This document shows, piece after piece, positions 1,575 to 63,125 of a stretch of DNA of 64,000 nt; position 1 is the stretch's first letter, and every line of letters starts with the position of its first letter. The notes under the pieces were generated by a model, which saw nothing but the letters and a program-made list of their open reading frames with translations, was not told where the DNA came from and did no database searches. The translations under genes and the position numbers were made by a program. This DNA is from Stegostoma tigrinum (Eukaryota), in NCBI RefSeq assembly GCF_030684315.1, contig NC_081396.1:9601628-9665627 (forward strand), given 5' to 3'.

Positions 1575-1776
1575 CTGACCGAATATTGATATAGAGTGAC
1601 AAGGTTGCCTGCATTTTCTGTGGGGAGAAAAGAATCAGAGGTAAACTTTGGCCTGAACGAATACCCATAGTTCTTTTTTTTATAAAATAGAGAAATATGA
1701 CTGGGATCATTCTTCAGTCTGTGTGTATTTCAAAACAGCCAGGTGAAACGTGTTATTTTTGACAAAATACAAACCT

Positions 1777-1876
1777 CATCTGAGCAACAGCTGAAATACT
1801 GTTTGCTACAACCAAATTAATGTACAACATTGAAAAAAGTAATTATCTCCCTGGAGCACAGAACCACACATAAATA
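1777..1876 (+). promoter_or_regulatory. Putative core promoter of GPCR copy 1: E-boxes, homeodomain + EBF-like site, TATA-like box
   Basis: CATCTG 1777, CAGCTG 1788, TAATTA 1840, TCCCTGGAG 1848, CATAAATA 1869; same order and spacing upstream of the other two copies. Confidence 0.55.
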
Positions 1877-1924
1877 TTATCTTCTTTCAGTGAAATGCAG
1901 AGCCGATCAGAGTTTCTAATAGAG

Positions 1925-4900
1925 ATGCACGCAATACTGACAGGTCCACTGTTTAATGTTTATTATCCTGTCCTTGCAGCAGTCGGAGTTCCTGGTAAAT
2001 CGTTGCAGTTCGTTTGTAGCTGCATGAAAAACGGATCAGACAAATTAATTCTCTCACTTTCCCAGGAGCGGTGCTACCATTGCAAATATGATTCTTCCCA
2101 TTTACTGGATTTGAATTTCAAAGATCAGCAGTGTCAGACACTTTGTTGAAATAATATGACTTCTCTGACAGGATCGTTTTACTTTCAACGTTTTTATTCT
2201 GAATTATTATTTTGTGATTTCTTCAGTTTGTTGACATAGATTCGTGGTATCAGTGCTCTGACTTCTCCCCGTTATCAAAATATGTCTCACAGGTCATTCC
2301 TGGCTGAGCAAGCATTTTATGTCCACAGTTCGTTGCCCTTGACAAGGTGGGTTCGAACTGGCTCAGTGAACCACTGCAACATATTTGCTATCGGTAGTTC
2401 CACAATAGTGTGCGAAAGGCAGTTCTGGGGCTTTGACAGAGTAGCAATGAAGGAAATTTGATACAATGGCTGACAGAAGAACTGGGTGTTGGTGTTACCT
2501 CGTCCTCCTTCCTGGTATTTGTCGTGAGTTTGGAAGGAGCAGTCCAAGGAACCTCGGTAAATATCAGAAGTGCAGAATACCAGAAGTGCACCGCCCCGCC
2601 CCCACCACCCCCCCCCCAACCCCACACACCCCCCGCGGCTGGCCTTTTACAGCATTGCATCCCGGGTGACCTCAAGTACTTGTCAACTTTATGGTGCACA
2701 AGATTCATTCGCCACGTTCCATTTTATCACCAAATTGTATAATTTCTCCTAGTTACTGGTATCACCACAGAACACCAATTCATTTCTGATGCATTATTTG
2801 CAGAATACTGTGGGTAAATCAATTTTTATTCATCACAGTGTTCTAACCAGCTGGCAAAGTCTCGGACGATTCGAATGATGAATGTGATTATCGCATGGAG
2901 TGCAGAAAATCTGCACCAGCAACACTTTTCAATCTCTCTTAATATTTATTTTCATCAACTTTAGAAGCTTCTGATTTTCAATTGACCACATCATGAGAAA
3001 CATGATCATTGGTGCTTGTCGTGGAATATGATACAGAATGAGGTGCTGCAAATTAAGAGACACATTCTCCTAATCTGACTCAGTCATTTGGAATATCTAC
3101 AAGGAATACACTTTAACTGTGGCAGGGCGAGGGATGAGGGACGCTAGAACTGTATAAAACTCTGCTATGTTAACATCCAGAGCATTGTATGCAGTCTCGA
3201 GTCAATGTTATAGGAAGGATGTGATTGCACTGAAAGAGGTAGAAAGATCATTTACCAGGATGCTGTCTGGGCTGGAGTTTTAATTATAAAGAGAGATTGG
3301 ACAGATGGGATTGCTTGTCTTCAATTCGCGGACAATGTTGAAATATATACAACCATGAGGGCACAGACAGGCTAAGTAGAAAGAAATGTTTCCCCTTCAT
3401 GGAAATATAAGTAAAAGATGGGTTGGTGGTCTTGATTTAAAACAAGGAGATTTAAAGTGATCTGAATATTTTCATTATTTTGATTGGCAGTTGGAATTTG
3501 AATTTCATTTCCTGTCATGGCGTTACATGCATAACGTCTCATAAACATATAAGAAGTATTTAGATGTACACTTGCGATGCCAGGCCATAAAAGGCTGCAA
3601 GTGAAGTAATGGAAAATGTGATTGTTTATGACTCGTAAAAACTCAATGGGCGAGGGGCCTTTTTTCTTCTGTTGACCTCAATGACTCTATAACTCGACAA
3701 TGAAATGCTGGTGCATGGTCATGTGAAGAGTCTCGTCTCACCATTGCATTCCACAAAAAGAAAATTGCTTTGGCAATGTCTACAAACTAATCCTCTAGCT
3801 CCTCTCTCTCCTGACAAATGTCTTGTAATTTTTGAGCCAGTTTACTCTCTCTTGCTTGAAATGTGTATTGGATTCTTGAAAGTATCGATTTAGATTTGGT
3901 TATCAGATACAGGCTGTGCCCCTGTTCATGTCAATGACTACGATGACATTGTTACTTATCCCATTTAATGTCTACTTCATTGTTGTTTTATTTTATTCCC
4001 ATTTGAAATGTGCCATTTCCTTATTTTCTCTACTTGGGATCCCATTATATTACATTGCTACCTAATTAGCCCAGCTCATTTATAAAACGAATGAACATTC
4101 AAAATGGAAAACCAATTTAATAAAATGTAATGAATCATTGAAGGCTATAATTAAACCTCAAATATTGAAGTTACACTAGAATTCTGTTGCATCGATAACT
4201 AAATTACAGGTAGAAGAAATAATTTGCCTGAATTCACTGTGGCCTTATAAACAGATGTGCTTCGTATCCTCTCTCCCCTTCTCTTTCCCTCTACTACAGC
4301 TAACGTGGTAGTGATTGTGATCCTGTCACAAAGAAGATGTGGTCTCTCTTAATGCATCAATTGTTATCTGGTGTCCATCGTGGTGGCAGATCTCTTGGTG
4401 GTGGTTACAGTTGTTATACTAAACAGGACTGCTGGAATTTATTTTCCTTTAAGTTTCCTATCTATCACACCACTGTGAAGTCTACGTTCTGCCTGAAATT
4501 ATGCAGCCCATGATGCTACTGCCTGGTTAACAGTCGCTTTCACATTTGACCGATTTGTGGCCATTTCTTGCCAGAAGTTAAAAATAACATATTCCACTGA
4601 GAAAATGGCAGCATGGAACATAGGAATTATCTCTGCTGTTACATGTATAAAAAATGCCTTCTTCTATTTTCAATATGAACCGATGTACATGATTAACAAC
4701 ACGCCCTGGTTCTGCAGCATAAAAATAAGTGTTTATACATCATCTGCATGGGCTGCATATGACTGGATTGTATTTATTTTCACACCTCAACTTCCATTTA
4801 TTCTGATTATACTTCTCAATGCTCTTACAGTCAGCCACATTCTAGCCACGAATCGGTCCTGCGAGAGAATCCGGTCTGGAGCAATGCAGAGAGTCAGAGT

Positions 4901-5209
4901 GATCCAGAGATGGTGAAGCAGAGGAAGTCCATTGTCTTACTCTTCACTATCTCGGGTAGTTCTGCCCTGTTATATTTGTGACGTTTTATATGGATCCCAT
5001 ATGTCTGATTTGCAAATGTTATTTACACTTCAGTTTCCAATTTCAGCAATTCGACATTTATCATCCAAGAAGCTGGATTTATGCTTCAGTTATTAAGTTC
5101 CTGCATCAACCCCTTTATTTATGCTGGCACCCAGAGTAATTTCAGAACAGAGTTACGAAATGGATTGAAATATCCAATGAACCTCTTCATGAAAGTATTT
5201 AAAATATGA
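1925..5209 (+). pseudogene. GPR139/GPR142-like GPCR pseudogene (exon 1 1925-1994, exon 2 4300-5209)
   Basis: Exon 1 reads MHAILTGPLFNVYYPVLAAVGVP+G followed by donor GTAAAT; acceptor ctactacag|CTAAC at 4299/4300. Exon 2 is colinear with the intact paralogs (FDRFVAISC, PWFC, SSCINPFIYAG) but has in-frame stops TAA 4350, TGA 4476 and TGA 4494 and a frameshift near 4870-4920. Confidence 0.9.
3090..3690 (+). mobile_element. Decayed CR1 3' fragment in intron of GPCR copy 1
   Basis: ctgtataaaactctg...gagcattgtatgcagt...tttaccaggatgctg, the CR1 RT C-terminal signature. Confidence 0.65.
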
Positions 5210-17987: not shown

Positions 17988-20180
17988 ACCTGCTCCTCCT
18001 GGTATATACGCGATACACGATGCTGAGGGGGCCGTGGATGGTTCGTTTAGCAATTTGGTCACACCGCAGATTAGGATTGCTGAGGGGAATAGCGAATGAG
18101 TGATCAAAAGGCAGAGGAAGAGCAGGAAGGCAGTGCAGGTGTCCCCTGCGGTCATCTCCCTCCAAAACAGGTATTCCGTTTTGAATACTGTTGGGGGAGA
18201 TAGCTCACCAGAGGAAGGTAGCAGTAGCCAGGTTCATGGCACCATGCCTGCCTCTGCTGTACAGAAGGGCGGGAAAAAGAGTGGAAGGGCGATAGTCATT
18301 GGGGATTCAATTGTAAGGGGAGTAGATAGGCGGTTCTGCGGTCGAAAACAGGACTCCTGAATGGTATGTAGCCTCCCAGGTGCACGGGTCAGGGATGTCT
18401 CCGATCGGCTGCAGAACATTCTGAAGGGGAAGGGCAAACTGCCAGTTGTCGTGGTGCATATAGGCACCAACGATATAGGCAGAAAACGGGATGAGGTCCT
18501 ACATGCAGAATTTAGGGAGTTAGGAGCCAAGTTAAAAAGTAGGACCTCAAAGGTAGTAATCTCAGGATTGCTACCAGTACCAAGTGCTAGTCAGTGCAGA
18601 AATGAAAGAATAGCTAGGATGAATGCGTGGCTTGAGGGGTGGTGTAGGAGGGAGGGGTTCAGATTTTTGGGACATTCGAACCATTTCCAGGGAAGGTGGG
18701 ACTATTACAAATTGGACGGTCTACACCTGAACCGGACTGGGACCAATGTCCTTGGGGGTGCTTTAGCTAATGCTGTGGGGGAGGGTTTAAGCTAGTGTGG
18801 CAGGGGGATGGGAAGCAAATATTGGACAGAAAAGAGGTAGAAACGAAAGCCTGTAGGGAACTAGATAATGGAGTCAGTGTGACTAAAGGGAATAGTAGTC
18901 GGGGAGCAGATGATGAACACAAAGGAACAGGTGGTCTGAGGTGCATTTGTTTTAATGCGAGAAGTGTAGTAGACAAGGCAGATGAGCTTAGGGCTTGGAT
19001 CGGTACCTGGAGGTATGATGTTATTGTTATTACTGAGACTTGGTTGAGGGAAGGACATGACTGGCAACTAGTTGTCCCAGGATATCGGTGCTTCAGGCGG
19101 GATAGAGAGGGAGGTAAAAGGGGTGGAGGAGTTGCAGTAATGGTCAAAGACGATATCACAGCCGCACTGAAGGAGGGTCCCATGGAGGACTCAAGCAGTG
19201 AGGCAATATGGGTAGAATTCAGAAATAGGAAGGATGCAGTAACAATGCTGGGGCTGTGCTACAGGCCTCCCAACAGCGAGCGTGAGATAAAGGTACAAAT
19301 ATGTAAACAGATAATGGAAAGGTGTAGGAGAAACAGGGTGGTGGTGATGGGAGATTTTAATTTTCCCAACATTGACTGGGATTCACTCAGTGTTAGGGGT
19401 CAAGACGGAGCAGAATTTGTAAGGTGTGTCCAGGAGGGTTTTCTATACCAGTATGTATGTCGTTCAACTCGGGAAAGGGCCATACTGGACCTGGTGCTGG
19501 GGAATGAACCCGGCCAGGTGGTTGATATTACAGTAGGGGAAGACTTTGGAAATAGCGACCACAATTCCATAAGTTTTACAAGACGCATGGACAAGGATAG
19601 GAGTGGTCCTAAAGGAAGAGTACTAAACTGGGGGAAGGCCGACTATACCAAGATTCGGCAGGATCTGAGGAATGTAGATTGGGAGAAACTGTTTGATGGT
19701 AAATCCACATTTGATATGTGGGAGGCTTTTAAGGAGAGGTTGATTAGCATGCAGGAGAGACATGTTCCTGTGAACATGAGGAATAGAAAAGGCAAGATTA
19801 GGGAGCCATGGATGACAGGTGAAATTGTGAGACTGTCCAAGAGAAAAAAGGAAGCATAAATGAGGTCTAGGCGACTGAAGACAGATGAAGCTTTGCAAGA
19901 ATATCGGGAATGTAGAGCAAATCTGAAAAAAAGGATTAAGAGGGCTAAGAGAGGACATGAGATATTGCTGGCAAACATGGTTAAGAAAAATCCCAAAGCC
20001 TTTTATTCATATATAAAGAGCAAGAGGGTAACTGGAGAAAGATTGGCCCACTTAAGGACAAAGAAGGGAAGTTATGCACTGAGTCAGAGAAAATGGGTGA
20101 CATTCTTAATGAGTACTTTGCATCGGTATTCACCAAGGAGAGGGACATGACGGATGTTGAGGTTAGGGATAGATGTTTGC
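17988..20180 (+). mobile_element. CR1-clade LINE 5' half: ORF1 SGNH esterase + ORF2 AP endonuclease, truncated before RT
   Basis: ORF1 IVIGDSIVR...PGAR...HIGTND...DGLHLN (stop at 18358); ORF2 CFNARS, ITETWL, RRDR..GGGVA, YRPP, MGDFN, LDL, SDH (18795-19859). Confidence 0.93.
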
Positions 20181-23436: not shown

Positions 23437-23705
23437 AGAGATAAAAGGAATTGCAGATGCTGGAGAATCTGAGATAACAATGTGTGGAGCTGGGTAAACA
23501 GAGCAGGCCAAGCAGCATCAGAGGAGCAGGAAGACTGACGTTTCAGGACTTGACCCTTCTTTGGAAATGGACTCTTTCTGAAGAAGCGTCTTGGCCTGAG
23601 ACGTCAGCCTTCTTTCTCCTCTGATGCTGCTTTGCCTGCTGTGCTCATCCAGCTCTACACCTTCTTATCTCAGATTTTCCAGCATCTGCAGTTCCTACTA
23701 TCTTC
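23437..23705. repeat. Fold-back Penelope-derived repeat
   Basis: Two head-to-head copies of the agataa..ggaactgcagatgctggagaatc unit. Confidence 0.8.
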
Positions 23706-24410
23706 GAGAACAATTCTTATCAGGATGTCATTCCTTGTGAGCGAGTGCAGATCCAACGGGAGCAGATCAATGTAGCTGTACTGAACTCCAGTTTTCTAGG
23801 ATGACAGATGGCTAGAATTAATCTGGTGACACAGGAAATTGAGACTGGCTAACCTGACGATGTGGATGCAGAATATAACTTTCTGGAGCAAAAAATAATC
23901 ACTAAATTCACACCCACTAAAGAGAAAAGAAGTCAGGAACAAATGTGAGGGTGCAGGACTGTATGTGATCGTGATGAATGCAACAGTGAGTACTGCAACT
24001 ACCCACATGAAATATAACAACGCACAAATAGAACAATATGCGAATACCTTTGTGGACAGAACATAACTCTATTTCACCATATCTGTATGTAATACGTCCG
24101 CAGACCCACGTATTTAAAATGGATGTCCAGTCTCAGAGAGGTTTAGCGTTGTACCTGATGAGTCATTGCAACAGTCCTACATTTATCAGAAGTGAGGTTG
24201 CATTGATTACATTTTTTCTGAAACTATTTACATTTGTGAGCACACTACGTCATAGTATGATACTGATGCTTTGTACAGACACAAATAGATTGGTCATTGT
24301 ATTTTTGAGAAAATGCACAAGTTTGCTATTCAGTCATCTCTTGGTTTTACAGTTTATTACCATATCAAACCTCATGAAAACAAAAATATTTCCTTACATC
24401 CCACAAAATC

Positions 24411-24505
24411 CAGCAGGCAGCAGATGCACCAATCTTATTGCGAAATTGACTTCTGAAAAATACCCACCTAATTAACTCCATGGGACATGGCATTAGGTAT
24501 AATTA
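24411..24505 (+). promoter_or_regulatory. Putative core promoter of GPCR copy 2
   Basis: CAGATG 24421, TAATTA 24469, TCCATGGGA 24477, TATAATTA 24498, 57 nt before the ATG. Confidence 0.55.
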
Positions 24506-24554
24506 TCACCAACCTTCAGTGAATTACGCAATGTGCTCAGATCTTCTGGCAGAA

Positions 24555-24624
24555 ATGCACGGAATACCAAATGGTCTACTGTTTTCCATCTACTATCCCA
24601 TCATTGCAGTTATTGGGATTCCAG
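24555..24624 (+). CDS. GPR139-like: GPR139-like GPCR copy 2, coding exon 1 (MHGIPNGLLFSIYYPIIAVIGIP, phase-1 donor)
   Basis: 70-nt exon homologous to those at 1925 and 58631; donor G|GTTATG; splices in frame to 26353 restoring GIP-A-NL of TM1. Confidence 0.85.
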
Positions 24625-26352
24625 GTTATGTTTTGTACTTACTTTCTTGATAGTATATTTTCTTTGCTCTAGCTTGTCTGAACTGTCCTCTTACACAAAA
24701 TCATTTCCCACCTTAATACCATTAGTTCATCATTTAGATGAAAGAATCTACCAAATGGTAACAGTTTCTCTGCATGAGGAGCGCAATTTTCTTCTTGAGT
24801 ATAGTTACATAACCACTTTCACAGGGAGCATTTTTCTTATGTTATTAATTTCATCCCTTTTGAGTTGTAATATCTTGTGACACTGCTGTGCCATTGTGTT
24901 ATTTATATTTTCTTTATTTATGACTAACTCCTCAACATGTGTATAAGGTGTGATTTCTATTCCCATTGTTTTTGTATGAAGTTTTCTTCTTCTTATTGCA
25001 GTGCAAAGACATTCCCTATTGTATTACTGCCAACGCTGTTGTAGTCAAGTCATGCAAAGATATTATAGTGTAAATGAAAGTTTACTGAGCCATTGGCGCT
25101 GTTGCTGTTGGCAAATCCTTCATTCGTTCACACAGTGTAACTCGGGTCTCACTGTGTCATTGATAGGGTTACTGTACGTGGTTTATCTTACAATTATCAT
25201 TCTAAAAATATTGCTTTCTTACATGGCTGATACAATTTAAGTAGGTGATTAACAAACAGTTGTCAGCGTATGATGTTGTGTTATTCTCAGAATATTCTGT
25301 GTGAAATACCATAATATTATCGCAGAATCAATGAAGAATTATTGTGTCATTCACTTTGTGAATGCGTGATGTTACAAAAAATGATTTTTTAAAAAGCGAG
25401 GTTGAAGTACTGACAAATTCCTTACTAGATCTGACATATGAATTTTCTGAAGAGACATTATTCAGTATAGGTATGGTTGTAGCTATAAATTCAATCAGCT
25501 CTTGTCATTGACTGTGAAATTGTAACAGTCCATACATTTTAGAGCACGCTACCTTTTCTTCTCAGTCTCTAAGATGCACTGTTTGAATCTACTTCTCCAC
25601 GTTCACAAGATCTGCTGCTAATGGTGTAAGACTGACAACTGTTGAGAGTCAGATTTTCCTCTGCTACCAGTACCTAACAATATGGTACACTCTTACCACC
25701 TTCAGTGCTTTTTCCAAGTTGAGTGAGAAGCCATATCTGGCAGCTTCTCTGAAATGGATGGTGTAATACTTTTATTTCCATAGCGTGAAGTTAATCAAAT
25801 GTACAAGGATTGCACACCAGCGCTGATGAAGATACTTCATTCCTGAATCAGAACACTTCCTCTGTTACTTCTGATGGTTCGAGAGAAGATCCATTTCACT
25901 TTAAAAACTGAGGAGCTCTGAATTGTCAGTGGCCCTGACTGGCATCTACCTTCTGATATCCCTGCTGTGTTGATGGAAAATTTGGTTTGATGTTCATTGT
26001 TTCTCTATTTAAGCATTAATCCAATCAAGTTGACTGATAAGTGCCACAACAGTGATTGGTTGTACAGTAACACATTGGAATGAATCACATTTATTCACAA
26101 TGGCACATAATTTTGGTTAATTACAGTTTCCCAATATATTATTATGCACCTTCACATATTCTATAATTCTTTGTTCATTCAACTTTCCTTGCATATTCAA
26201 TTCGACTGCATTGCCTTGTGTGTTTTTGAAACCATACTGTTTTTGTTCATATCTCATTGGAAATCTCTCCATCTCACTATTGTTATTGTACATAATTTCA
26301 CTCTCTCTCTCTCTCTCTCTCTCACCCCATCCCTGCCTCCTTTTTATTACAG

Positions 26353-27263
26353 CTAACCTGATTGTGATTGTGATCCTGTCTCAAAGAACATGCGGTCTCG
26401 CTGGGTGCATCACTTATTACCTTGTCTCAATGGCAGCGACAGATCTCCTGGTCATAGTTACAGCTGTCCTATTGAACCGGATTGCTGGGATTTATTTTCC
26501 GTTAAGTTTCCTTTCCATCACCCCATTGTGCAGTTTGCGTTCTGCCCTAATTTATGCATCTACAGACAGTTCTGTTTGGTTAACAGTCACTTTTACCTTT
26601 GACCGATTTGTCGCCATTTCATGTCGAAAGCTGAAAATAAGATGTTGCACTAAGATGATGGCAGCACAAGTTATAGGAATCATCTCTGCCTTGAGTTGCA
26701 TAAAAAATGCCTTTGTATATTTTGTGTATGAACCTATGTACATAATTAACAAAACACCATGGTTCTGTAGCATAAAATTAGTATTTTACACATCACCTGC
26801 ATGGGCTGCATATGACTGGGTGCGACCCATTGTCACCCCTAGTCTCCCATTCATTTTGATTATATTGTTCAATGCTCTGACTGTCAGACATGTTCTAGCA
26901 GCCAATAGAGCCCGCAGGAGAGTTCGAGCTCAGAACAATGGAGAGCACCAGAGTGATCCGGAGGTGGAGAAGCGGAGAAAGTCAATTGTTTTACTTTTTG
27001 CCGTCTCCTGCAATTTCATTCTACTCTATTTACTGTTCATGGTAACTATCATCTATGTTCGAATTGTTGATTTTACTTATTTCTCAGGTTCAGATTCTAG
27101 TGAATCAACATTTCTTCTTGAGGAATATGGATTTATGCTTCAGCTTCTGAGTTCCTGCATCAACCCATTTATTTATGCAGGAGTACAAGTGAAATTCAGA
27201 GCAGAATTATTAAATGGTGTGAAATATCCATGGAGGTTATTGCATAAGTCACTCAAATTGTGA
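26353..27263 (+). CDS. GPR139-like: GPR139-like GPCR copy 2, coding exon 2 (spliced protein 326 aa, intact)
   Basis: Open frame with 7TM pattern: ANLIVIVILS (TM1), YLVSMAATDLL (TM2), TFDRFVAISC (TM3), PWFC (ECL2), LPF (TM5), SSCINPFIY (TM7); acceptor ttattacag after a (CT)n tract. Confidence 0.92.
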
Positions 27264-34445: not shown

Positions 34446-36177
34446 CTAAAGAAGAAGCCTAAAAGCATAAATTCACAATGAAGAGAGTAGAGAGGTACAA
34501 AATGCAAGCAAGGTAACAAATGAAGCTTGTGTCTTCATATCAAGGGGGCGGACATACATCCATAGATGTGCAGATTAGGTGGAAATGGGCATTGACCACA
34601 GTATCCAGACATGTGCAAGAAAGGTGGGGTAGCCTTGGGAAGTGCAGGATTGCTGGAATAAGGAGGGCCTGAGTTGGATTTTCATCAGGGGGTCGGTGCA
34701 GACTCGGTGGACCGAATGACCTCTTTCAGCACGGTAGGGATTCTCTGATTATATGAAGTCATGAAAGTCAAACCTTATTTGTGTGGAGCCCTTTGATCAA
34801 TATGTTTATTCCCTTGTTGAACTCTGTGCAACACACTCCAGCAATGCATTTGTTTTTTGCACAACACAAATCATCAAAACAAAAATTGGAATAGAATGTT
34901 AATTTATGGGCAGAAAGGCACGCAAAGGATGAAGAATTGTGGACTCTCTCACAACTAAAGTGCCTCTGATTCAAGAATATTCGGGATATTATGTGTTGTG
35001 GTTTCGGATGTGCAGATCAGAAGCAGGCAAATCATCTAAAAAGAGAAGTTGCGGAGTTGATTATGTCAAACAGGACCTTCCACTCAAATTTCTTCAGCTA
35101 TCTCACATTTTCCCCTAACTCTTCTGGCCTCCCACATAATCTGAAACACCTTCCTTGTATTGATTTCACGAAACTGGACAGTAATCAGAAGACATTCCAT
35201 TGTAAACTATCAGCCTTCTCCAGAAGAGAGACATATGCTGCTCCACCTTTCAGTTCGGTCTGAACTCAACTCGTGTGAAATTTCTGAAGCAGGGTACCAA
35301 CCCAAAACGTCAGCTTCCCTGCTCCTCTGAAGCTACTTGGGCTGCTGTGTTCCTCCAACTCCACACTGTGTTATCTCTGACTCCAGCATTGGCAGCTCTT
35401 ACCATCTCTGAGTGAGAACAACAGTGTCTCTATTGAAAGCAGGGCTGTTCGCACAGCTCCAACATTTTACATCATCGCTTCAGAACAAGAGCTCTGCTTT
35501 TCAGTTACTTTCCAACAGATATACCTGGAGTTCAATGTTTGTCTGAGAGTGATCTTGCTAAGCCGCGTCGTCAATTTCCACATGACCATACATTAAGATT
35601 CCTTTGTCCTTAGCCCTCTTAAGATTTATATTTTTCAAGGAGCATGTGATCTCTACATACTTAAAAACAAACTTACATCAGTACATACCGATAAATATTG
35701 ATTTTTTTAAACATCTGGAATTAAGAGTCGAATGATAACTATGAATCCGTCGTCTATTATCGGAAAATCCTATCCGGTTCACTAATATCTGTTAGGGAAC
35801 ACAACTGGCATCGTTACCTGGTCTGGAATTTATGCGACTCCAGACTCACAGCAATGTGGTTGGCCCTAGAGTGCCCTCTGGTCAATGAAGGATGGGCAAC
35901 ACATTCTGGCCTAATCAGCGTCACCCTCATCTTGTGAAAACTGTTTTTAAATTGCCAATGGTCGGTCCCTTTTGTAAGATTTTTAATCTCTGTTTTGGCA
36001 ACCTTGTATCCTAACTGACACATCATGGGATATTGCAGAGTGGGTGTAAGCTGCAAATCAACTGTGAATGAATTAGACTTGGAGCAGGTCTGAGAAGTTG
36101 GAAGTTACAAACATGCTCCTGTACTTCTGGGATATAAATATGAAATGGCACGAGTTTCGTTTTTGCTTTATCCGCAG

Positions 36178-36470
36178 ATTATATTGTATATTACTGGTGA
36201 AGAGGTAGTTGAGCAATCATTCCCATCTCAGGATCCGAGTGAACGGAAGATTATATCAAAACACTGTCATGCAACCATCTCATTCTCTGCGGGATACTGG
36301 TTCGTGCCAACTCCGAATCACAGCCCAAAAATGTTGGTCATGGTGGCGGGAAGCGAAACAGTGAATAATGGCAGATTTGGAGCAGTCAGTCGAAGTGAAG
36401 AGAACAGCAGCTCTCTGATAATATCGATCTTACATCCAACAGACGCTGGAACCTACTTTTGTGAATTACT
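36178..36470 (+). other. Antigen-receptor variable (V) gene segment, most like TCR alpha/delta V; functional status uncertain
   Basis: Open V-set domain: EEVVEQS...HC(B strand)...YWF(C strand)...GRF...SSSLII..L.PTDAGTYFC, ending directly at an RSS heptamer; polypyrimidine/CAG acceptor ends at 36177. Confidence 0.85.
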
Positions 36471-36509
36471 CACAGTGCGGAAACGAGCGACAGAGTCCGT
36501 ACAAAATCC
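36471..36509 (+). other. Recombination signal sequence, 23-bp spacer
   Basis: CACAGTG (36471-36477) + exactly 23 nt + ACAAAATCC (36501-36509; 8/9 to ACAAAAACC), 8 nt after the conserved Cys codon. Confidence 0.92.
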
Positions 36510-36969
36510 TCGCCTGCTGTGAATATTCTGTATTTTGAGTAAAATATCTGAGTAAGTATAGTAGAACGTCGGATATGGATAACGCAAATCGGGTGATATT
36601 CTCTCCAGACAAACTGTTATATCGATCCTGATGCAAATTAAAACCGGGCTATATTTCGATTGTTGTCAGTTTGTTAGTGAATAATCTGTGCGTACAACAA
36701 TTATCAGCAGTTAACTGATGTCGTTCCCCTGAACCTGCATTTGGGGCCTGAGGTTTACACTGGATTTTTAAATGATACAGGAAAACTGCTCGAAGCAGGG
36801 ACCAGCATTTCAGCTGCATCAAATGTACTCAAATGTCATGCTGAGCCTTGCATTTCCTCGGGGGATATTCCTGGGGAAATTATACCTTGACGTTGGAAGC
36901 ACTGTAGTCCATTCAGACAAGTAAAATGGCTCGTTTCATGTGAGTTGAAATCGACTTACATTTCAATCC

Positions 36970-37619
36970 AAGATAATAAAAATGTGAGGCTGGATGAACA
37001 CAGCAGGCCAAGCAGCATCTCAGGGGCACAAAAGCTGACGTTTCGGGCCTAGACCCGTCATCAGAGAGGGGGATGGGGTGAGGGTTCTGGAATAAATAGG
37101 GAGAGAGGGGGAGGCGGACCGAAGATGGAGCAATGGGAGAGAGATTCCCTGAGGTTTGTCCGGAGGGAGGAGGGTAACTTCTTCAGGTTAGGCATCCCTG
37201 GAAGAGGCTTCGCAGTGAGGTTAAAATTGTATCAGAGATAATGGGAACTGCAGATGCTGGAGAATCCAAGATAATAAAAATGTGAGGCTGGATGAACACA
37301 GCAGGCCAAGCAGCATCTCAGGAGCACAAAAGCTGACGTTTCTGGCCTAGACCCTTCATCAGAGAGGGGGGTGGGGTGAGGGTTCTGGAATAAATAGGGA
37401 GAGAGGGGGAGGCGGACCGAAGATGGAGCAATCTCTCCCATTGTTCCATCTTCGGTCTGTCTCCCCCTCTCTCCCTATTTATTCCAGAACCCACATCCCA
37501 TCCCCCTCTCTGATGAAGGGTCTAGGCCCGAAACGTCAGCATTTGTGCTCCTGAGATGCTGCTTGGCCTGCTGTGTTCATCCAGCCTCACATTTTTATTA
37601 TCTTGGATTCTCCAGCATC
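36970..37619. mobile_element. Penelope-derived insertion with two tandem and one inverted terminal repeat, 13-bp TSD
   Basis: TSD tacatttcaatcc at 36957-36969 and 37620-37632; two minus-strand repeat units 298 nt apart, then a plus-strand copy. Confidence 0.88.
37508..37540 (+). ncRNA. Minimal hammerhead ribozyme motif (Penelope type)
   Basis: CTGATGA (37510) + A + GGGTC-TA-GGCCC stem II + GAAACGTC; related copies at 37036-37063(-), 37334-37361(-), ~45602-45630(-) and, degenerate, ~45986(+). Confidence 0.65.
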
Positions 37620-38369: not shown

Positions 38370-39660
38370 CCTCCTCCCAAAAATCTTCCTGGAAAAGTGC
38401 TACCCCGATACCAATTCTATCACCTCTGCCGCATCTGCTACCAGGATAAAGCATTCCACTCCCATGCATCTCAGATGTCCTCGTTTTTCAAAGACCACAA
38501 TATCCCCCCAGCAGTGGTCGAGAACATCTTGAAACGTGTCTCCCGCATTTCCCACAGCTCATCCCTCACACCCCGTCCCCGCAATAACAACCATGAAAGA
38601 ATTCCCCTCGTCCTCACGTACCGCCCACCAACCTCCAGATCCAGTGCATCATCATCCAACACTTCCATGATCGACAATCCGACCCCACCACCAAAGACAT
38701 TTTTCCATCCTCACCTTGGTCTCCTTTCCGGAGCGACCACTCTCTCCATGACTCCCTTGTCTGCTCCACACTCTTCTCCATCCCCACCATATCTGGGACT
38801 TTTCCCTGCAACCGCAGGAAGTGCTGCTCTTGCCCCCACACCTCCTCCCTCACCACGTCCCAGGTCCCAAGAAGATTTTCCATATCAAGCAGATGTTCAC
38901 CAGCACATCTGCTAATGTGGTATACTGCATCCACTGTACGGGTAGTGGCCTCCGCTACATCGGGGAAACCAAGTGGAGGCTTGGGATCCACTTCGCAGAA
39001 CACCTACACTCCTTTCGCAATAAACAACTGCACCTCCCAGTTGCAAACTATTTCAACTCACCCCCCTGTTCCTGAGATGACTTGTCCATCCTGGGCCTCC
39101 TGTCATGCCACAACAATGCCACCTGAAGGTTGCAGGAATAGCAACTCATATTCCGCTTGGGAACCCTGCAGCCCAATGCTATCGATGTGGACTTCACAAG
39201 CTTCAAAATGTCCCCTTCCCCCACCGCATCCCAAAACCAGCCCAGCTCATCCCCGCCTCCCTAACCGGTTCTTCCTAACACCTATCATCTCCTCCCACCT
39301 CAGGCCCCACCACATCTCCTACCTACTAACCTCATCCCAACCCCTTGAATTGTCTCTCCTCCCTGGACTGACCTATCCCCTCCCTAACTCCCCACCAGCA
39401 CTCACCTCTACAGGCTTCATCTCCGCATCTTTAACTTGTTTGTCTCTTCTCCACTTATCATCTCCGTTATGCATACTCGATCCGCACCCCCCCCTTCTCT
39501 CGCTATTTATTTCAGAACACCCTCCCCCATTTCAAAGGAATGGTCCAGGCCCGAAACGTCAGCTTTCCTGCTCCTCTGCTGCTCCTTGGCCTGTTGTGTT
39601 TACCCAGCTCTAGACCTTGTTATCACGGATTCTCCAGCATCCACAGTTCCCATTATCTCT
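38370..39660 (+). mobile_element. Penelope-like retroelement 3' half with GIY-YIG endonuclease
   Basis: FTSTSANVVYCIHCTGSGLRYIGETKWRLGIHFAEH (38821-39075), followed by the cccgaaacgtcagc...gttcccattatctct terminal repeat. Confidence 0.88.
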
Positions 39661-41009: not shown

Positions 41010-41840
41010 AAAAAAGACAGAGCCTCTGTCTATCTCTTTCTTGAAAGCATCCAGAGAGTTGGCCTCCACTGCCTTCTGGGTCAGAGCATTCCATATGTCC
41101 ACCACTCTCTGGGTGAAAAAGTTTTTCTCAACTCTGTTCTAAATAGCCTACTCCTTATTTTTAAACTGTGTCCTCTGGTCCTGGACTCACCCATCAGCGG
41201 AAACATGCTTCCTGCCTCCACAGTGTCCAATCCCACAATAATCTTAAACGTCTCAATCAGATCCCCTCTCATCCTTCTAAACTCAAGAGTATACAAGCCC
41301 AGTCGCTCCAATCTTTCAACATATGATAGTCCCGCCATTCTGGGAATTGACCTTGTGAACCTACGCTGCACTCCCTCAATAGCAAGAATGTCCTTCCTCA
41401 AATTGGGAGACCAAAACTGCACACAATACTCCTGGTGCGGTCTCACCAGGGCCCTGTACAGCTGCCGAAGGACCTCTTTGCTCCTATACTCAATTTTTCT
41501 TGTTCTGAAGGCCAGCATGCTATTAGATTTCTTCACTACCTGCTGTACCTGCATGCTTGCTTTCATTGACAAGAACACCTAGATCTCGTTGTGCTTCCCC
41601 TTTACCTAACTGGACTCCATTGAGATAGTAATCTGCCTTCCTGTTCTTGCCACCAAAGTGTATAACGACACATTTATCCACATTACTGCATCTGCAATGC
41701 ATCTGTCCACTCACCTAGCCTGTCCAAGTCACCCTGTATTCTAATAACATCCTCCTCACATTTCACACTGCCACCCAACTTTGTGTCATCAGCAAATTTG
41801 CGAATATTACTTCTGATGCCTTCAATATATATAAATGTAG
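41010..41840 (-). mobile_element. Relatively young CR1 3' fragment nested among older CR1 pieces
   Basis: ORF 41081-41578: QLYRALVRPHQEYCVQFWSP...RRFTR...RGDLIETFK...TRGH. Confidence 0.9.
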
Positions 41841-43562: not shown

Positions 43563-43813
43563 GTCCATCCTATGGCTTTGTAAAAACACTCTCGCATCTT
43601 TCTTCCCTCCAGACTTGCATGAAGCTTGGAATCTTGTAAAGGCTTAGATTCGGTGGCACTGACTGTTTCCTGAGGGACAGGAGTAAATCTATTCAGTTTT
43701 TATGACAATCTGCTCGCGTTCATTGTCACTTTTGCCTCGTACTGACCTCACCTGTCATTGTATTTCTGTGGGCTCTCTCTGACTCATGTTCTCTGTTTTA
43801 AGTCATTTTCACA

Positions 43814-44950
43814 GGATCTGAAGAGAATCTACATGCAGAAAACTCCAACGAAACACCACACCAGGTTGCAGCAGAATCACCCAGGTTGGAGTTGTCTGAA
43901 ATGCCATCGGATTCTGACCATGGAAGGAAAAAGCGCTGTTTGCAGTGGAGAGGAACTATACATGTGTTCTGTGTGTGGACGAGGTTCCAGCCAACCAGCT
44001 GGTCTGCCAACACACACATGCACTGGCCGTTGGGTGAAACCGTGGAAATGTGGGGACTGTGGGGAGAGATTCCGGTTCCCATCAGAGCTAGAAACTCACT
44101 GGCGCACTCACACTGGGGAGAGGTCATTCACCTGGTCCAACTGTGGCAAGGAATTCATTAATTCATCCAACCTGTTCAAACATCGACGAGTTCACACTGG
44201 GGAGGGACTGTTCACTTGCTCCGATTGTGGGAAGAGCTTCTGGCCTGCAGACACACCAATGTGTTCAAACTGACCAGAAACCTTTTCAATGCTCAAGTTG
44301 TGGCAAATGTTATAAAATCTCCTGGGAACTGATCTCCCACCAAAGTGTTCACACTGAAGGGAGGCTGTTCAGCTGCGCTTGCTGTGGAACTGGGTTCAAG
44401 ATGTCGTCGGATGTCACCGTACACCAGCGAGTACACACTGGAGAGAGGCCATTCAATTGTATCCAGTGTTGGGTAAAGTTCACCCGCTCGTCCAACCTGC
44501 TGAGACACCAGCGTGTTCACACTGGGGACAGGCCATTCACTTGCCCCCACGGTGCAGGAAGGGATTCGCTCATTCATCCAAAATACTGAGGCACCAAAGA
44601 TCTCACACTGCAGAGAGGCCATTCATCTGCCCTGAGTGTGGGAAGGGTTTCACCCAGTTAGTCAGCTTCCTGAAGCATCGCAGTACTCACACTGCAGAGA
44701 GGTTGTTCACCTGTTCTGAGTGCGGGAAGGGATTCACTCAGTCATCCCGCATGTTGGTACATCAGCAACTTCACACCGGGGAGAGATCTTTCACGTGCCC
44801 TGAGTGTGGGAAGGGACTCACTCAGCCATGCATCCTCCTGAAACACAGGCAAATCCACCCCGGGGAGAGACCCTTCACCTGATCGGAGTGTGGGAAAAGA
44901 TTCACTCGGTCATCCCATCTCCTCTGACATTAGCAAATTCACAAATAACA
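43814..44950 (+). pseudogene. C2H2 zinc-finger array, frameshifted (probable pseudogene)
   Basis: Repeated CxxCGKxF...HxxxHTGERPF units spread over three overlapping frames (43758-44273, 44143-44589, 44379-44882), with lost cysteines and a stop at 44880. Confidence 0.85.
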
Positions 44951-55748: not shown

Positions 55749-56370
55749 TCACTTCTCAAATATTTTAATACAGTTTGTGGGATATTTCATTGCAATATTA
55801 ATCCAGTTCTGAATTCAACATGGGGGCCAGTATAATTTTTTTTTAAAAGTGAAGAAGGAGCTTAAAAACTGAACCATAAATCCAATTTCTTGGACGACAA
55901 ATGTAGAATAGCTGACTTTGTAACCTCGAGTATAGGTAACGTTTGTGAGTTGGGCACATTAGATCCAAAATAAATTGCAAATATAATAGGATGATATTAT
56001 CTGAGATGGTGAAGAGTAAATCAATCGACATTTTCTGCTTCACCATCTCTGGGTCATCTATATTCTTTCCGTTGCTCCAAGACCAGACATTCCTGTAAGA
56101 TCTATCGATCGTTAGCATATGTTTGGCAATGAGCAGTAAAATCAGAATAAATGGAAGTAGAGGTGGTAAAATGAATGCAACTCAGTATGGCTCATGTAGG
56201 TGATGTATAAACAATTAGATTTATGCTGCAGAACCAGGGTATGTTGTTAATTACGGACGTCGCGTCCTATTGAGAAAAATACAACAAGGCATTTTTTTTC
56301 CTGCACAGGCCAAAGTGAAGACGATTTCTAAAATAAACTGATCCATCTTCGCAGTGCAATTTCTGATGGC
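55749..56370 (-). pseudogene. Inverted, 5'-truncated GPR139-like pseudogene fragment (TM4 to C-terminus)
   Basis: Minus-strand translation has DPEMVKQKMSIDLLFTISDNIILLYL (cf. DPEVEKRRKSIVLLFAVSCNFILLYL) and PWFC; the 3' end gaaatatccc...tgaaaagtag parallels copy 1; several frameshifts. Confidence 0.8.
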
Positions 56371-58210: not shown

Positions 58211-58481
58211 TGGTTCTGTGGTGAGTGACCACTGGATGAGGAGGCCACATCGCGCCTGCTCTGTGGTTACATGTACTGAGGCAGAATTTGGCTGCATTTT
58301 CCATGAAGGGATAATTTTCTAATCGCGGCCAGCAGTGAAAATAAATGCTTTGGTCTTATCTCTATCTCCAGGCAGTCACCGTTTCTATAATGAAATGCTA
58401 GTGGGACGGCTGTGGTTTCAGTGTACTTCACTATTAGACGTATGGCAAAGGGAAATATTTCATCCATCAAAACATAAACAT

Positions 58482-58579
58482 CAGCTGGCAACAGATGCGC
58501 ACTGCTGTTTGTTACAAGCACTTCAGGAAAATTTAACGAATGAATGAACTCCCCCGGAGCATGGAGGGTGGTATAAATA
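58482..58579 (+). promoter_or_regulatory. Putative core promoter of GPCR copy 3
   Basis: CAGCTG 58482, CAGATG 58492, GAATGA 58542, TCCCCCGGAG 58550, TATAAATA 58572, 59 nt before the ATG. Confidence 0.55.
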
Positions 58580-58630
58580 TCACCAATGTTACACTGAAAT
58601 TCTGAACGGAGATCAGACTGTCTGATAGAA

Positions 58631-58700
58631 ATGCATGAAGCACTAGAAGGTTTGCTGTTTGCCATTTACTACCCCATCATTGCAGCTATCGGAGTTCCTG
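58631..58700 (+). CDS. GPR139-like: GPR139-like GPCR copy 3, coding exon 1 (MHEALEGLLFAIYYPIIAAIGVP, phase-1 donor)
   Basis: 70-nt exon with consensus donor G|GTAAGT, homologous to the other two first exons. Confidence 0.88.
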
Positions 58701-59425
58701 GTAAGTTACTGTGCCTTGTTAGTGACAGCTCGAATGATGGGTAAACAACAGCCAATGAGACATTTCATTAGAACCGCTTCTCCACGTTTCAGGTACCCTG
58801 TCTCCAATTCAACATCTTCTCATTACCCCCCTTGCCAACATACTGGATTTTGTTTAGGTGCGATTTTTTTTACCATCAAATTCTCATGACTTCGGAACTT
58901 CAACCTCATAATCTCTCCCACTTCTCGCATTTTGACAAAATTTGGAGGGATTAATCTGTAATTTCTCCCAAGTTATCATGTCTACTTCAGAATCTAAATC
59001 TCAAGGTTTCATCATATTGCACCTGTAATTTGACAATTAGCAGTATTCTGTCTCCCGAGACGTGAACAATTTCATTGTTCCAATTCTATGATTCTACAGT
59101 TTAGACCTCAGCAGATAAATGTAGTAGAGATGCACCAAAGGCCCGCTTCCTGTGGTGAATCGGCACAATGTTACCATGGCGTCAAATCAGTTCTGTTCTG
59201 GCATTGACTATGTTCTTATGGGTAAATGAATGAAAACTTTACTGTTGTGCAAAATGGTTCTGAGTGGACACTGAAATTTGAGTACTCTCATCACGTTGCG
59301 AATTACGCCCTCTTCCATGGGTCGCTTCAACTGTGAATAAGTTGTCCTATTCTTCACAGAGTGCAATTGTAGATTTGTTGCTGCTCTGCCAACTGCAGGA
59401 GAAGAAGGACCATGAATTAAATTGA

Positions 59426-62199: not shown

Positions 62200-63125
62200 C
62201 TAACCTAGCCGTTATTGTGATCCTGTCTCGGAAAAGGTGCGGTATTTCAGAATGTATCTCTTATTACTTGGTGTCAATGGCGGTGTCAGATCTGCTGGTC
62301 ATAGTGACAGCTGTCATATTAAACCGCATTGCTGGGATTTACTTCCCGTCTAGTTTTCTCTCCCTCACACCAGTGTGCAGTGTGCGTTCTGCGTTAAATT
62401 ATGGATTTATTGATAGCTCTGCCTGGATAACAGTCGCTTTCACTGTTGATCGATTTGTAGCCATTTCTTGCCAGACCCTCAAAGTACCATATTGCACCAA
62501 GAGGACGGCAATGCGTTCTGTAGGAATCGTGATCACATTAAGCTGTGTAAAAAATATATTTGTGTATTTTACATATGAACCGAGGTACGTGGTAAAAAAA
62601 ATACCCTGGTTCTGTAACCTAAAAGATATATTTTTCACGTCAGTTGCATGGGTTGCTTATGACTGGGTTCGTTCAATTTTAACCACTTGTCTCCCATTCA
62701 TTCTGATTTTACTGCTCAATGCTCTGACCGTCAGGTACATTCTAGAGGCTAATAGAGCCCGCAGGAGACTCCGGACCCAGAACAATGGAAAGTATCAGAG
62801 TGATACAGAAATGGAGAAGCGGAGAAAGTCAATCATTTTGCTATCTGCAATTTCAGGCAGTTTCATTCTGTTCAATGCACTATACTTTATCACTATCCTG
62901 TACGTCCGCATCGGGAATCTTACTTATGCCTCGGATTCCGACTTTAACAATCTCTCTTTTGTTCTCAATGAAAATGCATTTACGCTTCAGTTTTTGAGTT
63001 CCTGCGTCAACACATTTATTTATGCTGGAACTTTGAGTAAGTTCAGAGCCGAGTTAAAGAACGGGGTAGAGTATCCATGGAGACTGTTCGTCAAAGGAAA
63101 TTCGGTTTTTGAAAGCAGGAAGTAG
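62200..63125 (+). CDS. GPR139-like: GPR139-like GPCR copy 3, coding exon 2 (spliced protein 331 aa, intact)
   Basis: Open frame ANLAVIVILS...YLVSMAVSDLL...TVDRFVAISC...PWFC...LPF...SSCVNTFIY; acceptor ctattacag|CTAAC at 62199/62200. Confidence 0.92.

What the first reader, a model, noticed from the sequence alone, without database searches (positions are those of the whole stretch)
24411..24505. Olfactory-receptor-like promoter module (E-box + homeodomain/EBF composite + TATA) conserved upstream of all three GPCR copies
Seen: each first exon is preceded by the same ordered motifs at near-fixed spacing. Copy 1: CAGCTG 1788, TAATTA-tc-TCCCTGGAG 1840-1856, CATAAATA 1869. Copy 2: CAGATG 24421, TAATTA-ac-TCCATGGGA 24469-24485, TATAATTA 24498. 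Copy 3: CAGATG 58492, GAATGA-ac-TCCCCCGGAG 58542-58559, TATAAATA 58572. EBF-like site to TATA is 21, 21 and 22 nt; TATA to ATG is 56, 57 and 59 nt. I could not align the introns by eye. Established: adjacent Lhx2-type homeodomain and Olf-1/EBF sites characterise vertebrate olfactory receptor promoters and enhancers. Inference: these receptors may be expressed in olfactory neurons. Alternative: EBF1 plus E2A E-boxes is also a B-cell code, and V segments lie nearby.
Basis: partly seen in the sequence, partly recalled or inferred. Interest (0 to 1): 0.82.

Follow-up and report, generated by a model that had tools for sequence, protein, structure and literature searches.

The report
Shared promoter of shark orphan-receptor genes
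Three neighbouring copies of a shark-specific orphan receptor gene keep the same roughly 180-base promoter in front of their first exon; it loosely resembles the switches of smell-receptor genes, but nothing yet shows where these genes are switched on.

Summary

The three two-exon GPCR copies share an alignable block from about -180 to the ATG; introns and other flanks do not align. Copy 1 is a pseudogene.

- **Conservation.** Taken whole, the block is no more conserved than 4-fold codon sites: 80/171 against 23/59 invariant, p=0.19. The motifs were picked after the fact and my alignment was anchored on them.
- **Olfactory reading.** This is weak. Against a published O/E consensus, copy 1 has 1 mismatch, copy 3 has 2, and copy 2 (the finding's own site) has 3, which is background level. 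Copy 3 has no TAAT core within 190 bases. A fixed TATA box is not typical of OR promoters, and the juxtaposed Lhx2/Ebf motif marks OR enhancers, not promoters (PMC5318403, PMC5608512).
- **Expression.** No RNA run was found.

Best reading: an inherited TATA-type promoter whose activators are unknown.

The parts
24381..24554 (+). Copy 2 proximal promoter plus 5'UTR, the block alignable with copies 1 and 3. It contains E-box CAGATG 24421-24426, TAATTA 24469-24474, C-rich/O/E-like element 24476-24485, TATAATTA 24498-24505, and the conserved 5'UTR blocks CAGTGAA 24517-24523 and TCAGA near 24536-24540. An upstream in-frame ATG lies at 24531.
24555..24624 (+). Copy 2 exon 1, coding part: MHGIPNGLLFSIYYPIIAVIGIP plus the first base of the next codon. 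Donor GT at 24625-24626.
   Evidence: Of the 120 shark homologues fetched, 86 begin with this MH... peptide.
26353..27263 (+). Copy 2 exon 2: an intact 7tm_1 receptor body after acceptor ...TTACAG, with the stop codon ending at 27263.
   Evidence: (PF00001, E=9.3e-21)
1746..1924 (+). Copy 1 promoter plus 5'UTR: E-boxes CATCTG 1777-1782 and CAGCTG 1788-1793, TAATTA 1840-1845, the best O/E-like site TCCCTGGAGCA 1848-1858, and CATAAATA 1869-1876.
1925..1994 (+). Copy 1 exon 1 (MHAILTGPLFNVYYPVLAAVGVP). Donor GT at 1995-1996.
4300..5209 (+). Copy 1 exon 2, a pseudogene: 5 in-frame stops and one frameshift relative to copy 2.
58451..58630 (+). Copy 3 promoter plus 5'UTR: tandem E-boxes CAGCTG 58482-58487 and CAGATG 58492-58497, GAATGA 58542-58547 (no TAAT core), TCCCCCGGAG 58550-58559 (one extra C relative to copies 1 and 2), and TATAAATA 58572-58579.
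58631..58700 (+). Copy 3 exon 1 (MHEALEGLLFAIYYPIIAAIGVP). Donor GT at 58701-58702.
62200..63125 (+). Copy 3 exon 2, intact 7tm_1 receptor body.
   Evidence: (E=2e-20)
55857..56296 (-). Decayed fourth copy: exon-2 fragments in three reading frames. No recognisable promoter or exon 1 was found for it.

Best explanation
The finding is the proximal promoter of a shark-specific orphan class-A GPCR family that NCBI auto-names 'probable GPR139'. Each tandem copy inherited it when the gene duplicated.

Anatomy:
- A TATA box lies 56-59 bases before the ATG.
- This should place the transcription start about 25-30 bases downstream of the TATA box (inferred), giving a 5'UTR of roughly 25-30 bases.
- Exon 1 is very short, encoding 23 residues. 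An intron of 1.7-3.5 kb follows, then the receptor body.
- Upstream of the TATA box lie an AT-rich element abutting a C-rich CTCC..GG element (about -86 to -70) and one or two CAGCTG/CAGATG E-boxes (about -150 to -134). These are the likely activator sites.
- The promoter is AT-rich and is not a CpG island, as expected for a tissue-restricted gene.

What is shown: the sequences, their order and spacing, their excess conservation over neighbouring promoter bases and over 4-fold codon sites, and the cross-species conservation of the last ~20 bases of the 5'UTR.

What is inferred: that this block is the active promoter, the position of the start site, and every transcription-factor assignment. 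The factor identities remain open. A bHLH plus homeodomain plus O/E-type combination is compatible with the sequence but is not diagnostic.
For: 1. Gene models. Exon 1, a GT donor and a conserved acceptor are present in all three copies. Of the 120 shark homologues fetched, 86 start with the same MH... 23-residue peptide. The ATG is therefore the family's start codon, and the block lies directly upstream of it.

2. Homology is limited to about -180..-1.
- Local alignment against random window segments gives z=6.3-7.2 for the bins -60..-1 and -180..-121 in copy pairs 1-3 and 2-3. Nothing appears beyond -180.
- The best ungapped 60-base diagonal is 39/60 in the promoter for pairs 1-2 and 2-3, against null maxima of 32-33. 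Introns and upstream regions stay at null level.
- Three-way invariant columns: 74/189 to 80/185 in the promoter, against 11-18% in five noncoding controls aligned the same way.

3. The duplicates are old. For copies 2 and 3, dS=0.88, dN/dS=0.26 and 4-fold identity is 44/83.

4. The motif columns stand out: 20/30 invariant, against 23/59 at shared 4-fold sites (p=0.012) and 60/155 elsewhere in the promoter (p=0.004; block permutation p=0.008). The TATA window is the single most conserved 8-column window (7/8).

5. Composition. GC is 36-42% and CpG observed/expected is 0.30-0.63 around the three starts.

6. Cross-species 5'UTR. Seven gene models of other sharks read through the 5'UTR in frame. 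All 7 end in [LV]-x-E before MH, and 6 of 7 have Ser three residues earlier, matching the window copies RSEFLIE / CSDLLAE / RSDCLIE.

7. A contig of the same organism's DNA runs lies on 24100-24602 at about 85% identity (76 other letters and 2 gaps in 503 bases). A younger paralogue therefore carries the same upstream region.

8. I could not check that note.
Against: - No transcript evidence exists. The run search returned 4 holders, none on record as RNA. When laid, they covered intron and exons alike, as DNA would. The start site is therefore unmapped.
- As a whole, the promoter is not more conserved than 4-fold sites (80/171 against 23/59, p=0.19). Its non-motif columns are at 42% (p=0.39). 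Much of the block may simply be neutral sequence that escaped large insertions and deletions.
- Copy 1 is a pseudogene, yet it carries the best-looking O/E-like site. This argues against strong current selection on that element.
- Three sequences, post-hoc motif choice and an anchored alignment all inflate the statistics.
Confidence: 0.62

Rival explanations
1. The cassette works like odorant-receptor control DNA: an Lhx2-type homeodomain protein and an Olf/EBF dimer bind the adjacent TAATTA and TCC..GG elements, with neurogenic bHLH factors on the E-boxes. They switch these receptors on in olfactory sensory neurons, possibly one gene per cell.
For: - Copies 1 and 2 have TAATTA two bases from a TCC..GG element. 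In copy 1 this element matches the published O/E core string with 1 mismatch. Only 16 such sites occur in 64 kb, and copy 1's is the only one of the 16 with a homeodomain-like site close beside it (8 bases; one other has one 29 bases away).
- O/E and homeodomain sites within a few hundred bases of the start are the recognised signature of OR promoters (PMC12547500, PMC3247239, PMC5318403, passages read).
- CAGCTG-type E-box matrices were mildly enriched in mouse OR promoters (PMC3247239, table text).
- The family behaves like a chemoreceptor family: 1181 proteins with E<=1e-3, tandem arrays, and 2 intact plus 2 dead copies in this window.
- The promoters are AT-rich and lack CpG islands.
- Sharks have very few canonical ORs (PMC11979771, passages read).
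- GPR139 itself is proposed to be activated by L-Trp and L-Phe (PMC5103216, abstract as shown in the search listing). That amino acids are classic fish odorants is recalled, not checked here.
Against: - Copy 2 is the intact gene with a 91% whale-shark counterpart, yet its O/E-like site has 3 mismatches; 96% of random 180-base windows do as well. Copy 3 has 2 mismatches (45% of windows).
- The O/E-like columns are 5/10 invariant, no better than 4-fold sites at 39%.
- The half-site register shifts between copies, and copy 3 has a 1-base insertion.
- Copy 3 has no TAAT core from -197 to the ATG.
- OR promoters usually lack a TATA box (PMC5318403).
- The juxtaposed composite is an enhancer feature, reported as enriched relative to OR promoters (PMC5608512, PMC12547500).
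- In catshark, the 50 most abundant and specific genes of the brain + olfactory epithelium library included no GPCR (PMC11979771, passage read). Sparse receptor genes would rarely reach such a list, so this is weak evidence.
- No RNA data are available.
Confidence: 0.17
2. A lymphoid code. The E-boxes (E2A/HEB) and the EBF-like site drive expression in B or T lineage cells, in keeping with the genes lying among TCR-type V segments.
For: - A V-set ORF lies at 36145-36522, between copies 2 and 3 (PF07686, E=6.6e-6).
- Earlier notes of this scan report the family interleaved with TCR V segments over megabases.
- CAGCTG/CAGATG E-boxes are conserved (5/6 columns).
Against: - None of the three promoters has an octamer within 400 bases.
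- The EBF-like site is weak in 2 of 3 copies.
- The promoter profile finds nothing near the V segment: only the three GPCR promoters score, and the next hit has E>1.
- Follow-up notes on other windows judged the V/GPCR interleaving to be passive co-amplification (not checked here).
- Linkage alone is not evidence. OR genes also sit beside the mammalian TCR alpha/delta locus (recalled).
Confidence: 0.05
3. No selected motif grammar. The similarity is what remains of common ancestry in a short stretch that escaped large insertions and deletions. At most the TATA box and the Kozak-proximal 5'UTR are functional, and the factor names are pattern-matching on AT-rich DNA.
For: - Whole-promoter invariance (80/171) does not differ from 4-fold sites (23/59, p=0.19). 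Non-motif columns are at 42%.
- Pairwise promoter identity is 56-66%, against 53-59% at 4-fold sites.
- The pseudogene copy is as well preserved as the intact ones (lineage counts: 28, 32 and 16 private changes for copies 1, 2 and 3).
- The composite pattern with up to 2 mismatches occurs 4 times against 1.45 expected, and 7 of 100 shuffles reach 4.
Against: - Motif columns are 20/30 invariant (p=0.012 against 4-fold sites).
- The conserved blocks are discrete, and the TATA box sits at a fixed distance from the ATG.
- The 5'UTR is conserved across shark orders in 7 of 7 read-through models.
- A second set of paralogues is reported to carry the same cassette (s1-881653, unchecked).
Confidence: 0.15

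Closest known systems
Mouse odorant-receptor proximal promoters (O/E plus homeodomain sites; Young et al. 2011 PMC3247239, review PMC12547500)
   Same: AT-rich, non-CpG-island promoters of a large tandem GPCR family. An O/E-like and an AT-rich homeodomain-like element lie within 100 bases of the presumed start. CAGCTG-type E-boxes are present.
   Different: - A strictly positioned TATA box is present here, whereas OR promoters usually lack one (PMC5318403).
- The O/E match is good in only 1 of 3 copies, and the TAAT core is absent in 1 of 3.
- The coding region is split by an intron after 23 codons, while OR coding regions are single-exon (recalled).
- The receptors are 7tm_1, not the OR family.
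- Expression is unknown.
Greek Island composite Lhx2/Ebf motif (Monahan et al. 2017, PMC5608512; PMC11643329)
   Same: The homeodomain hexamer and the O/E-like element are juxtaposed, 2 bases apart between TAATTA and TCC. In the mouse composite the two motifs are described as 1 bp apart.
   Different: - The mouse composite marks intergenic enhancers and is reported as enriched relative to OR promoters. Here the elements sit 21-22 bases upstream of a TATA box.
- A letter-level comparison was not possible: the logo is a figure and the probe sequences are in closed supplements.
Subfamily-conserved V1R promoters (Stewart and Lane 2007, PMC1955453, abstract read)
   Same: Tandemly duplicated chemoreceptor-type genes whose promoter regions were copied with the gene and remain alignable among paralogues, while the other noncoding DNA diverges.
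   Different: The V1R blocks are about 1 kb with mapped start sites. Here only about 180 bases are alignable, and no start site is mapped.
GPR139 (solved structures 7VUG and others)
   Same: Class-A receptor. GPR139 is the only solved chain aligned over nearly the whole exon-2 product (residues 1-283).
   Different: The similarity is only remote (E=5e-6, 29 bits), and a CCR2 chimera scores higher on a partial stretch. The NCBI name 'probable GPR139' is an automatic label, not demonstrated orthology.

Membership tests
OR-type promoter (O/E + homeodomain) | O/E site matching the published consensus within a few hundred bases upstream of the start | tested here: inconclusive
   Tested against TCCCYNGRGAR, the core of the V$NOLF string printed in PMC3247239. 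Copy 1 has 1 mismatch, copy 3 has 2 and copy 2 has 3. The background fraction of 180-base windows holding such a hit is 3.8%, 45% and 96% respectively.
OR-type promoter (O/E + homeodomain) | Homeodomain (TAAT-core) site close to the O/E site | tested here: inconclusive
   TAATTA is present in copies 1 and 2 at the aligned position. Copy 3 has GAATGA and no TAAT core from -197 to -1.
OR-type promoter (O/E + homeodomain) | AT-rich promoter without a CpG island | tested here: met
   GC is 0.36-0.42 and CpG observed/expected is 0.32-0.63 over -500..+500.
OR-type promoter (O/E + homeodomain) | Usually TATA-less, or TATA not tightly tied to the start (PMC5318403) | tested here: not met
   All three copies have a TATA-like octamer at 56-59 bases from the ATG. 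It is the most conserved 8-column window (7/8).
OR-type promoter (O/E + homeodomain) | Expression in olfactory sensory neurons; occupancy by Lhx2/Ebf | not testable with these tools
Greek Island composite enhancer motif | Stereotyped juxtaposition of Lhx2 and Ebf motifs | tested here: inconclusive
   The TAATTA-NN-TCC arrangement is present in copies 1 and 2. The reference logo and probes were not readable, being in a figure and closed supplements of PMC5608512.
Greek Island composite enhancer motif | Located in intergenic enhancers rather than promoters | tested here: not met
   The element lies 21-22 bases upstream of the TATA box and 78-81 bases before the ATG.
TATA-box core promoter | TATA consensus about 25-35 bases upstream of a mapped start site | tested here: inconclusive
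   The TATA sequences are present and conserved. The start site is not mapped, as no RNA is available.
B-lineage E2A/EBF/Oct promoter | Octamer ATGCAAAT together with EBF and E2A sites | tested here: not met
   No octamer occurs in -400..-1 of any copy (octamer string recalled). The EBF-like site is weak in 2 of 3 copies.
GPR139/GPR142 receptors | Clear sequence relationship to GPR139 | tested here: inconclusive
   7tm_1 domain E=9.3e-21. GPR139 chains score only E=5e-6. No tree was built.

The most novel reading that the evidence does not exclude
The cassette is the family-wide switch of a hidden, very large chemosensory receptor family of sharks and rays. On this reading, hundreds of orphan class-A receptors, distantly akin to the amino-acid-sensing GPR139, are expressed sparsely in olfactory neurons under an Lhx2/EBF/bHLH logic older than the split of cartilaginous and bony fishes. 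That would explain how sharks smell with almost no canonical OR genes.
Probability: 0.13. Interest if true: 0.9.

Novelty: new member of a known kind. Interest (0 to 1): 0.4.

Why it matters
A promoter copied along with tandem gene duplicates is ordinary. What gives this one some value is the gene family it belongs to.

- The family is large: 1181 proteins with E<=1e-3, and 119 of the best 120 are named as shark proteins.
- I found no paper about it: searches for GPR139 + shark, GPR139 + expansion + olfactory, and cartilaginous + orphan + GPCR + tandem + olfactory + expansion.
- Sharks are known for a tiny canonical OR repertoire (PMC11979771).

A short, well-defined promoter block gives a concrete handle for experiments. 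It can be scanned across all paralogues, tested in reporter fish, and used to design probes and 5'RACE primers that would settle where the family is expressed.

Tried and rejected
- **Orthologous and paralogous DNA from other sharks.** A metagenome scan with an exon-1 pattern found 0 stretches. A metagenome scan with the exon-2 protein gave 79 pattern matches, none confirmed by tblastn. No phylogenetic footprinting was therefore possible.
- **RNA evidence.** The run search listed 4 runs, none on record as RNA. When laid, they covered intron and exons alike, as DNA would. One search's table of other letters shows 40 of 724 rows. In 24314-24527 it lists differences at 24324, 24349, 24364, 24392, 24393 and 24463, none inside the four motifs. 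Because the table is truncated, I draw no conclusion from that.
- **A fourth promoter for the decayed minus-strand copy.** nhmmer with the promoter profile finds only the three known copies; the next hit has E>1.
- **Residual homology in introns and further upstream.** None was found above the null. Neutral sequence at about 53% identity would be undetectable by these tests, so the flanks do not prove constraint on the promoter.
- **Other factor readings.** A forkhead-like TGTTTGY occurs at -125 and an RFX half-site at about -143, each in copies 1 and 3 only (motif strings recalled). A Runx-like AACCACA in copy 1 only and a GATA-like TGATAG in copy 3 only were read by eye. None is shared by all three copies, so I rejected them as shared elements.
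- **ORFs overlapping the promoters.** 24038-24475 (+) and 58267-58665 (-) have no counterpart in the other copies and are taken as spurious.
- **Joined model.** The joined exon-1 + exon-2 protein was never built or searched.
- **Species.** The best hit is 91% to whale shark. Earlier notes of this scan call the genome zebra shark. I did not verify this.

Full report
**Observation.** I read the three regions directly.
- Copy 1: CAGCTG 1788, TAATTA 1840, TCCCTGGAG 1848, CATAAATA 1869, ATG 1925.
- Copy 2: CAGATG 24421, TAATTA 24469, TCCATGGGA 24477, TATAATTA 24498, ATG 24555.
- Copy 3: CAGATG 58492, GAATGA 58542, TCCCCCGGAG 58550, TATAAATA 58572, ATG 58631.

The stated spacings are correct: 21/21/22 from the O/E-like start to the TATA box, and 56/57/59 from the TATA box to the ATG.

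**Gene context.**
- Each module precedes a 70-base coding first exon (23 codons plus one base, GT donor). An intron of 1.7-3.5 kb follows, then a second exon holding a 7tm_1 receptor body.
- Copy 2 (exon 2 at 26353-27263) and copy 3 (62200-63125) are intact. Copy 1 (exon 2 about 4300-5209) has 5 in-frame stops and a frameshift. A fourth, decayed copy lies on the minus strand at 55857-56296.
- A search with exon 2 alone found 1181 proteins with E<=1e-3 among 3537 candidates. Of the best 120, 119 are named as shark proteins, mostly 'probable G-protein coupled receptor 139'. The top hits are 91% to whale shark and 82% to epaulette shark.
- True GPR139 is only a remote relative (E=5e-6 against the solved chains).
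- Of the 120 fetched proteins, 86 begin with the same MH... 23-residue exon-1 peptide. The two-exon layout and this ATG are therefore family-wide.
- I did not build or search the joined two-exon protein.

**How far the similarity extends.**
- Local alignments scored against random window segments show homology only in -60..-1 and -180..-121: z=6.3-7.2 for copy pairs 1-3 and 2-3, and 1.1-1.2 for pair 1-2. [quoted passage not shown] Almost nothing appears beyond -180; two isolated pair-bins reach z~3 (pair 1-3 at -400..-301, pair 1-2 at -700..-501).
- The best ungapped 60-base diagonals reach 39/60 in the promoter for pairs 1-2 and 2-3, against null maxima of 32-33. They reach 31/60 for pair 1-3. 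Upstream and intron segments stay at null level.
- With the same aligner, three-way invariant columns are 74/189 (unanchored) or 80/185 (anchored) in the promoter. The controls give 34/187 and 36/201 in intron ends, 38/215 and 24/228 further upstream, and 31/212 in the 3' flank.

**Neutral benchmark.**
- Copies 2 and 3 have dS=0.88, dN/dS=0.26 and 4-fold identity of 44/83.
- At 59 4-fold sites shared by all three copies, 23 are invariant (39%).
- The promoter as a whole (80/171 ungapped columns) is not above that (p=0.19). Its non-motif columns are at 42% (p=0.39).
- Within the promoter, motif columns beat the rest (20/30 against 60/155, p=0.004). In 20000 random placements of blocks of the same sizes, P=0.008.
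- By element the invariant counts are E-box 5/6, homeodomain hexamer 4/6, O/E-like 5/10 and TATA 6/8.
- The most conserved 8-column windows are the TATA box (7/8), then GATCAGA and TGAAAT in the 5'UTR, the TTAaCTCC junction and the E-box (each 6/8).
- These figures rest on three sequences, on motifs chosen after looking, and on an alignment I anchored on them. I treat them as moderate support, not proof.

- I used the O/E core string printed in Young et al. 2011 (PMC3247239, table text). Copy 1 has 1 mismatch; 16 such sites occur in the 64-kb window on both strands, and 3.8% of 180-base windows hold one. Copy 3 has 2 mismatches (45% of windows). Copy 2, the finding's own coordinates, has 3 mismatches (96% of windows).
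- Against the 10-base EBF palindrome (recalled), each copy has 2 mismatches. The best register differs by one base between copies 1 and 2, and copy 3 carries an extra C.
- TAATTA is exact in copies 1 and 2. There are 22 TAATTA in the window. Copy 3 has no TAAT core anywhere from -197 to the ATG.
- The conserved core is really AAT.A.CTCC..GG..CA.
- The E-box block is the best upstream element: tandem CAGCTG/CAGATG 10-11 bases apart in copies 1 and 3, and a single CAGATG in copy 2.
- No octamer is present in any copy.
- The composite pattern, allowing up to 2 mismatches, occurs 4 times in the window against 1.45 expected; 7 of 100 shuffles reach 4.
- Of the 16 good O/E-like sites, copy 1's has a homeodomain-like site 8 bases away; one other (46195) has one 29 bases away, and the remaining 14 have none within 40 bases.

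**Outside evidence.**
- The run search found 4 holders, none on record as RNA. When laid, their contigs cover intron and exons alike. One contig lies on 24100-24602 at about 85% identity, which indicates a younger paralogue with the same upstream region.
I could not fetch promoters of other paralogues or species.
- Indirect cross-species evidence exists for the 5'UTR only. Seven shark gene models read through it in frame. All 7 end in [LV]-x-E before MH, and 6 of 7 have Ser three residues earlier, as do the three window copies.
I could not check it.

**Literature (what I saw).**
- Passages of PMC5608512 and PMC12547500: OR promoters are enriched for O/E and homeodomain sites, but the juxtaposed composite motif is enriched in Greek Island enhancers relative to OR promoters.
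- A passage of PMC11643329: the two motifs are 1 bp apart in the composite.
- Passages of PMC5318403: OR promoters are AT-rich and usually lack a TATA box.
- Table text of PMC3247239: O/E sites are about 7-fold enriched and TATA is not enriched.
- Passages of PMC11979771: catshark canonical ORs are few and not olfactory-specific, V2Rs dominate, and the top 50 genes of the brain + olfactory library include no GPCR.
- Abstract of PMC1955453: V1R promoters are conserved within subfamilies.
- Searches for the family itself found no paper describing it.

**Mechanism and rivals.**
- Most likely (0.62): this is the inherited TATA-type proximal promoter of the family. E-box and AT-rich/CTCC elements act as activator sites, and the factors are unknown.
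- The olfactory Lhx2/EBF reading remains possible (0.17), but it rests mainly on a pseudogene's site.
- A lymphoid reading has almost no support (0.05).
- The view that only the TATA box and the 5'UTR matter, with the rest being residual ancestry, cannot be excluded (0.15).

**Verdict.** The kind of thing is known: a promoter co-duplicated with tandem receptor genes, as in V1R subfamilies. The interest lies in the undescribed family it belongs to. Supplements that might bear on the composite-motif comparison (PMC5608512, files 2 and 7) were closed.

Noticed in passing
window 36145-36522 (+): An ORF with an immunoglobulin V-set domain (PF07686, E=6.6e-6), ending in ...YFCELL, lies between GPCR copies 2 and 3. 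Earlier notes of this scan (s1-881701) call it a rearranging TCR-type V segment with a 23-RSS.
   Followed up: partly
window 36855-36878: Two overlapping near-consensus O/E-type palindromes (1 mismatch each to the published core) lie about 330 bases downstream of the V-set ORF. No homeodomain-like site lies within 40 bases.
   Followed up: no
window 55857-56296 (-) and 60231-60320 (+): A decayed fourth receptor copy lies on the minus strand, with fragments in three frames. A separate 30-residue exon-2-like piece lies inside the intron of copy 3.
   Followed up: partly
window 23439-23703, with more than 20 related pieces across the window: A 265-base element is about 81% identical to its own reverse complement and is repeated many times in the window (for example 63572-63781, 39527-39660, 37223-37357). 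It looks like a hairpin-forming short interspersed or MITE-like repeat.
   Followed up: no
window 43758-44882 (+): Overlapping ORFs in several frames are full of C2H2 zinc-finger linkers (HTGERPF type). This is probably a frameshifted or multi-exon zinc-finger gene inside the receptor cluster. One whale-shark model (P0103) fuses zinc fingers to a receptor of this family.
   Followed up: no
window 18361-19859 (+), 41081-41578 (-), 60524-61036 (+): These ORFs look like LINE pieces by eye (endonuclease-like and reverse-transcriptase C-terminal-like stretches); no domain search was run. One sits in the intron of copy 3.
   Followed up: no
window 24531-24554: Copy 2 has an in-frame ATG 24 bases upstream of the family start codon. 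It gives MCSDLLAE before MHG, and the whale-shark model P0001 starts the same way (MCSELLAE). It would lie almost at the cap if the TATA box sets the start site.
   Followed up: partly
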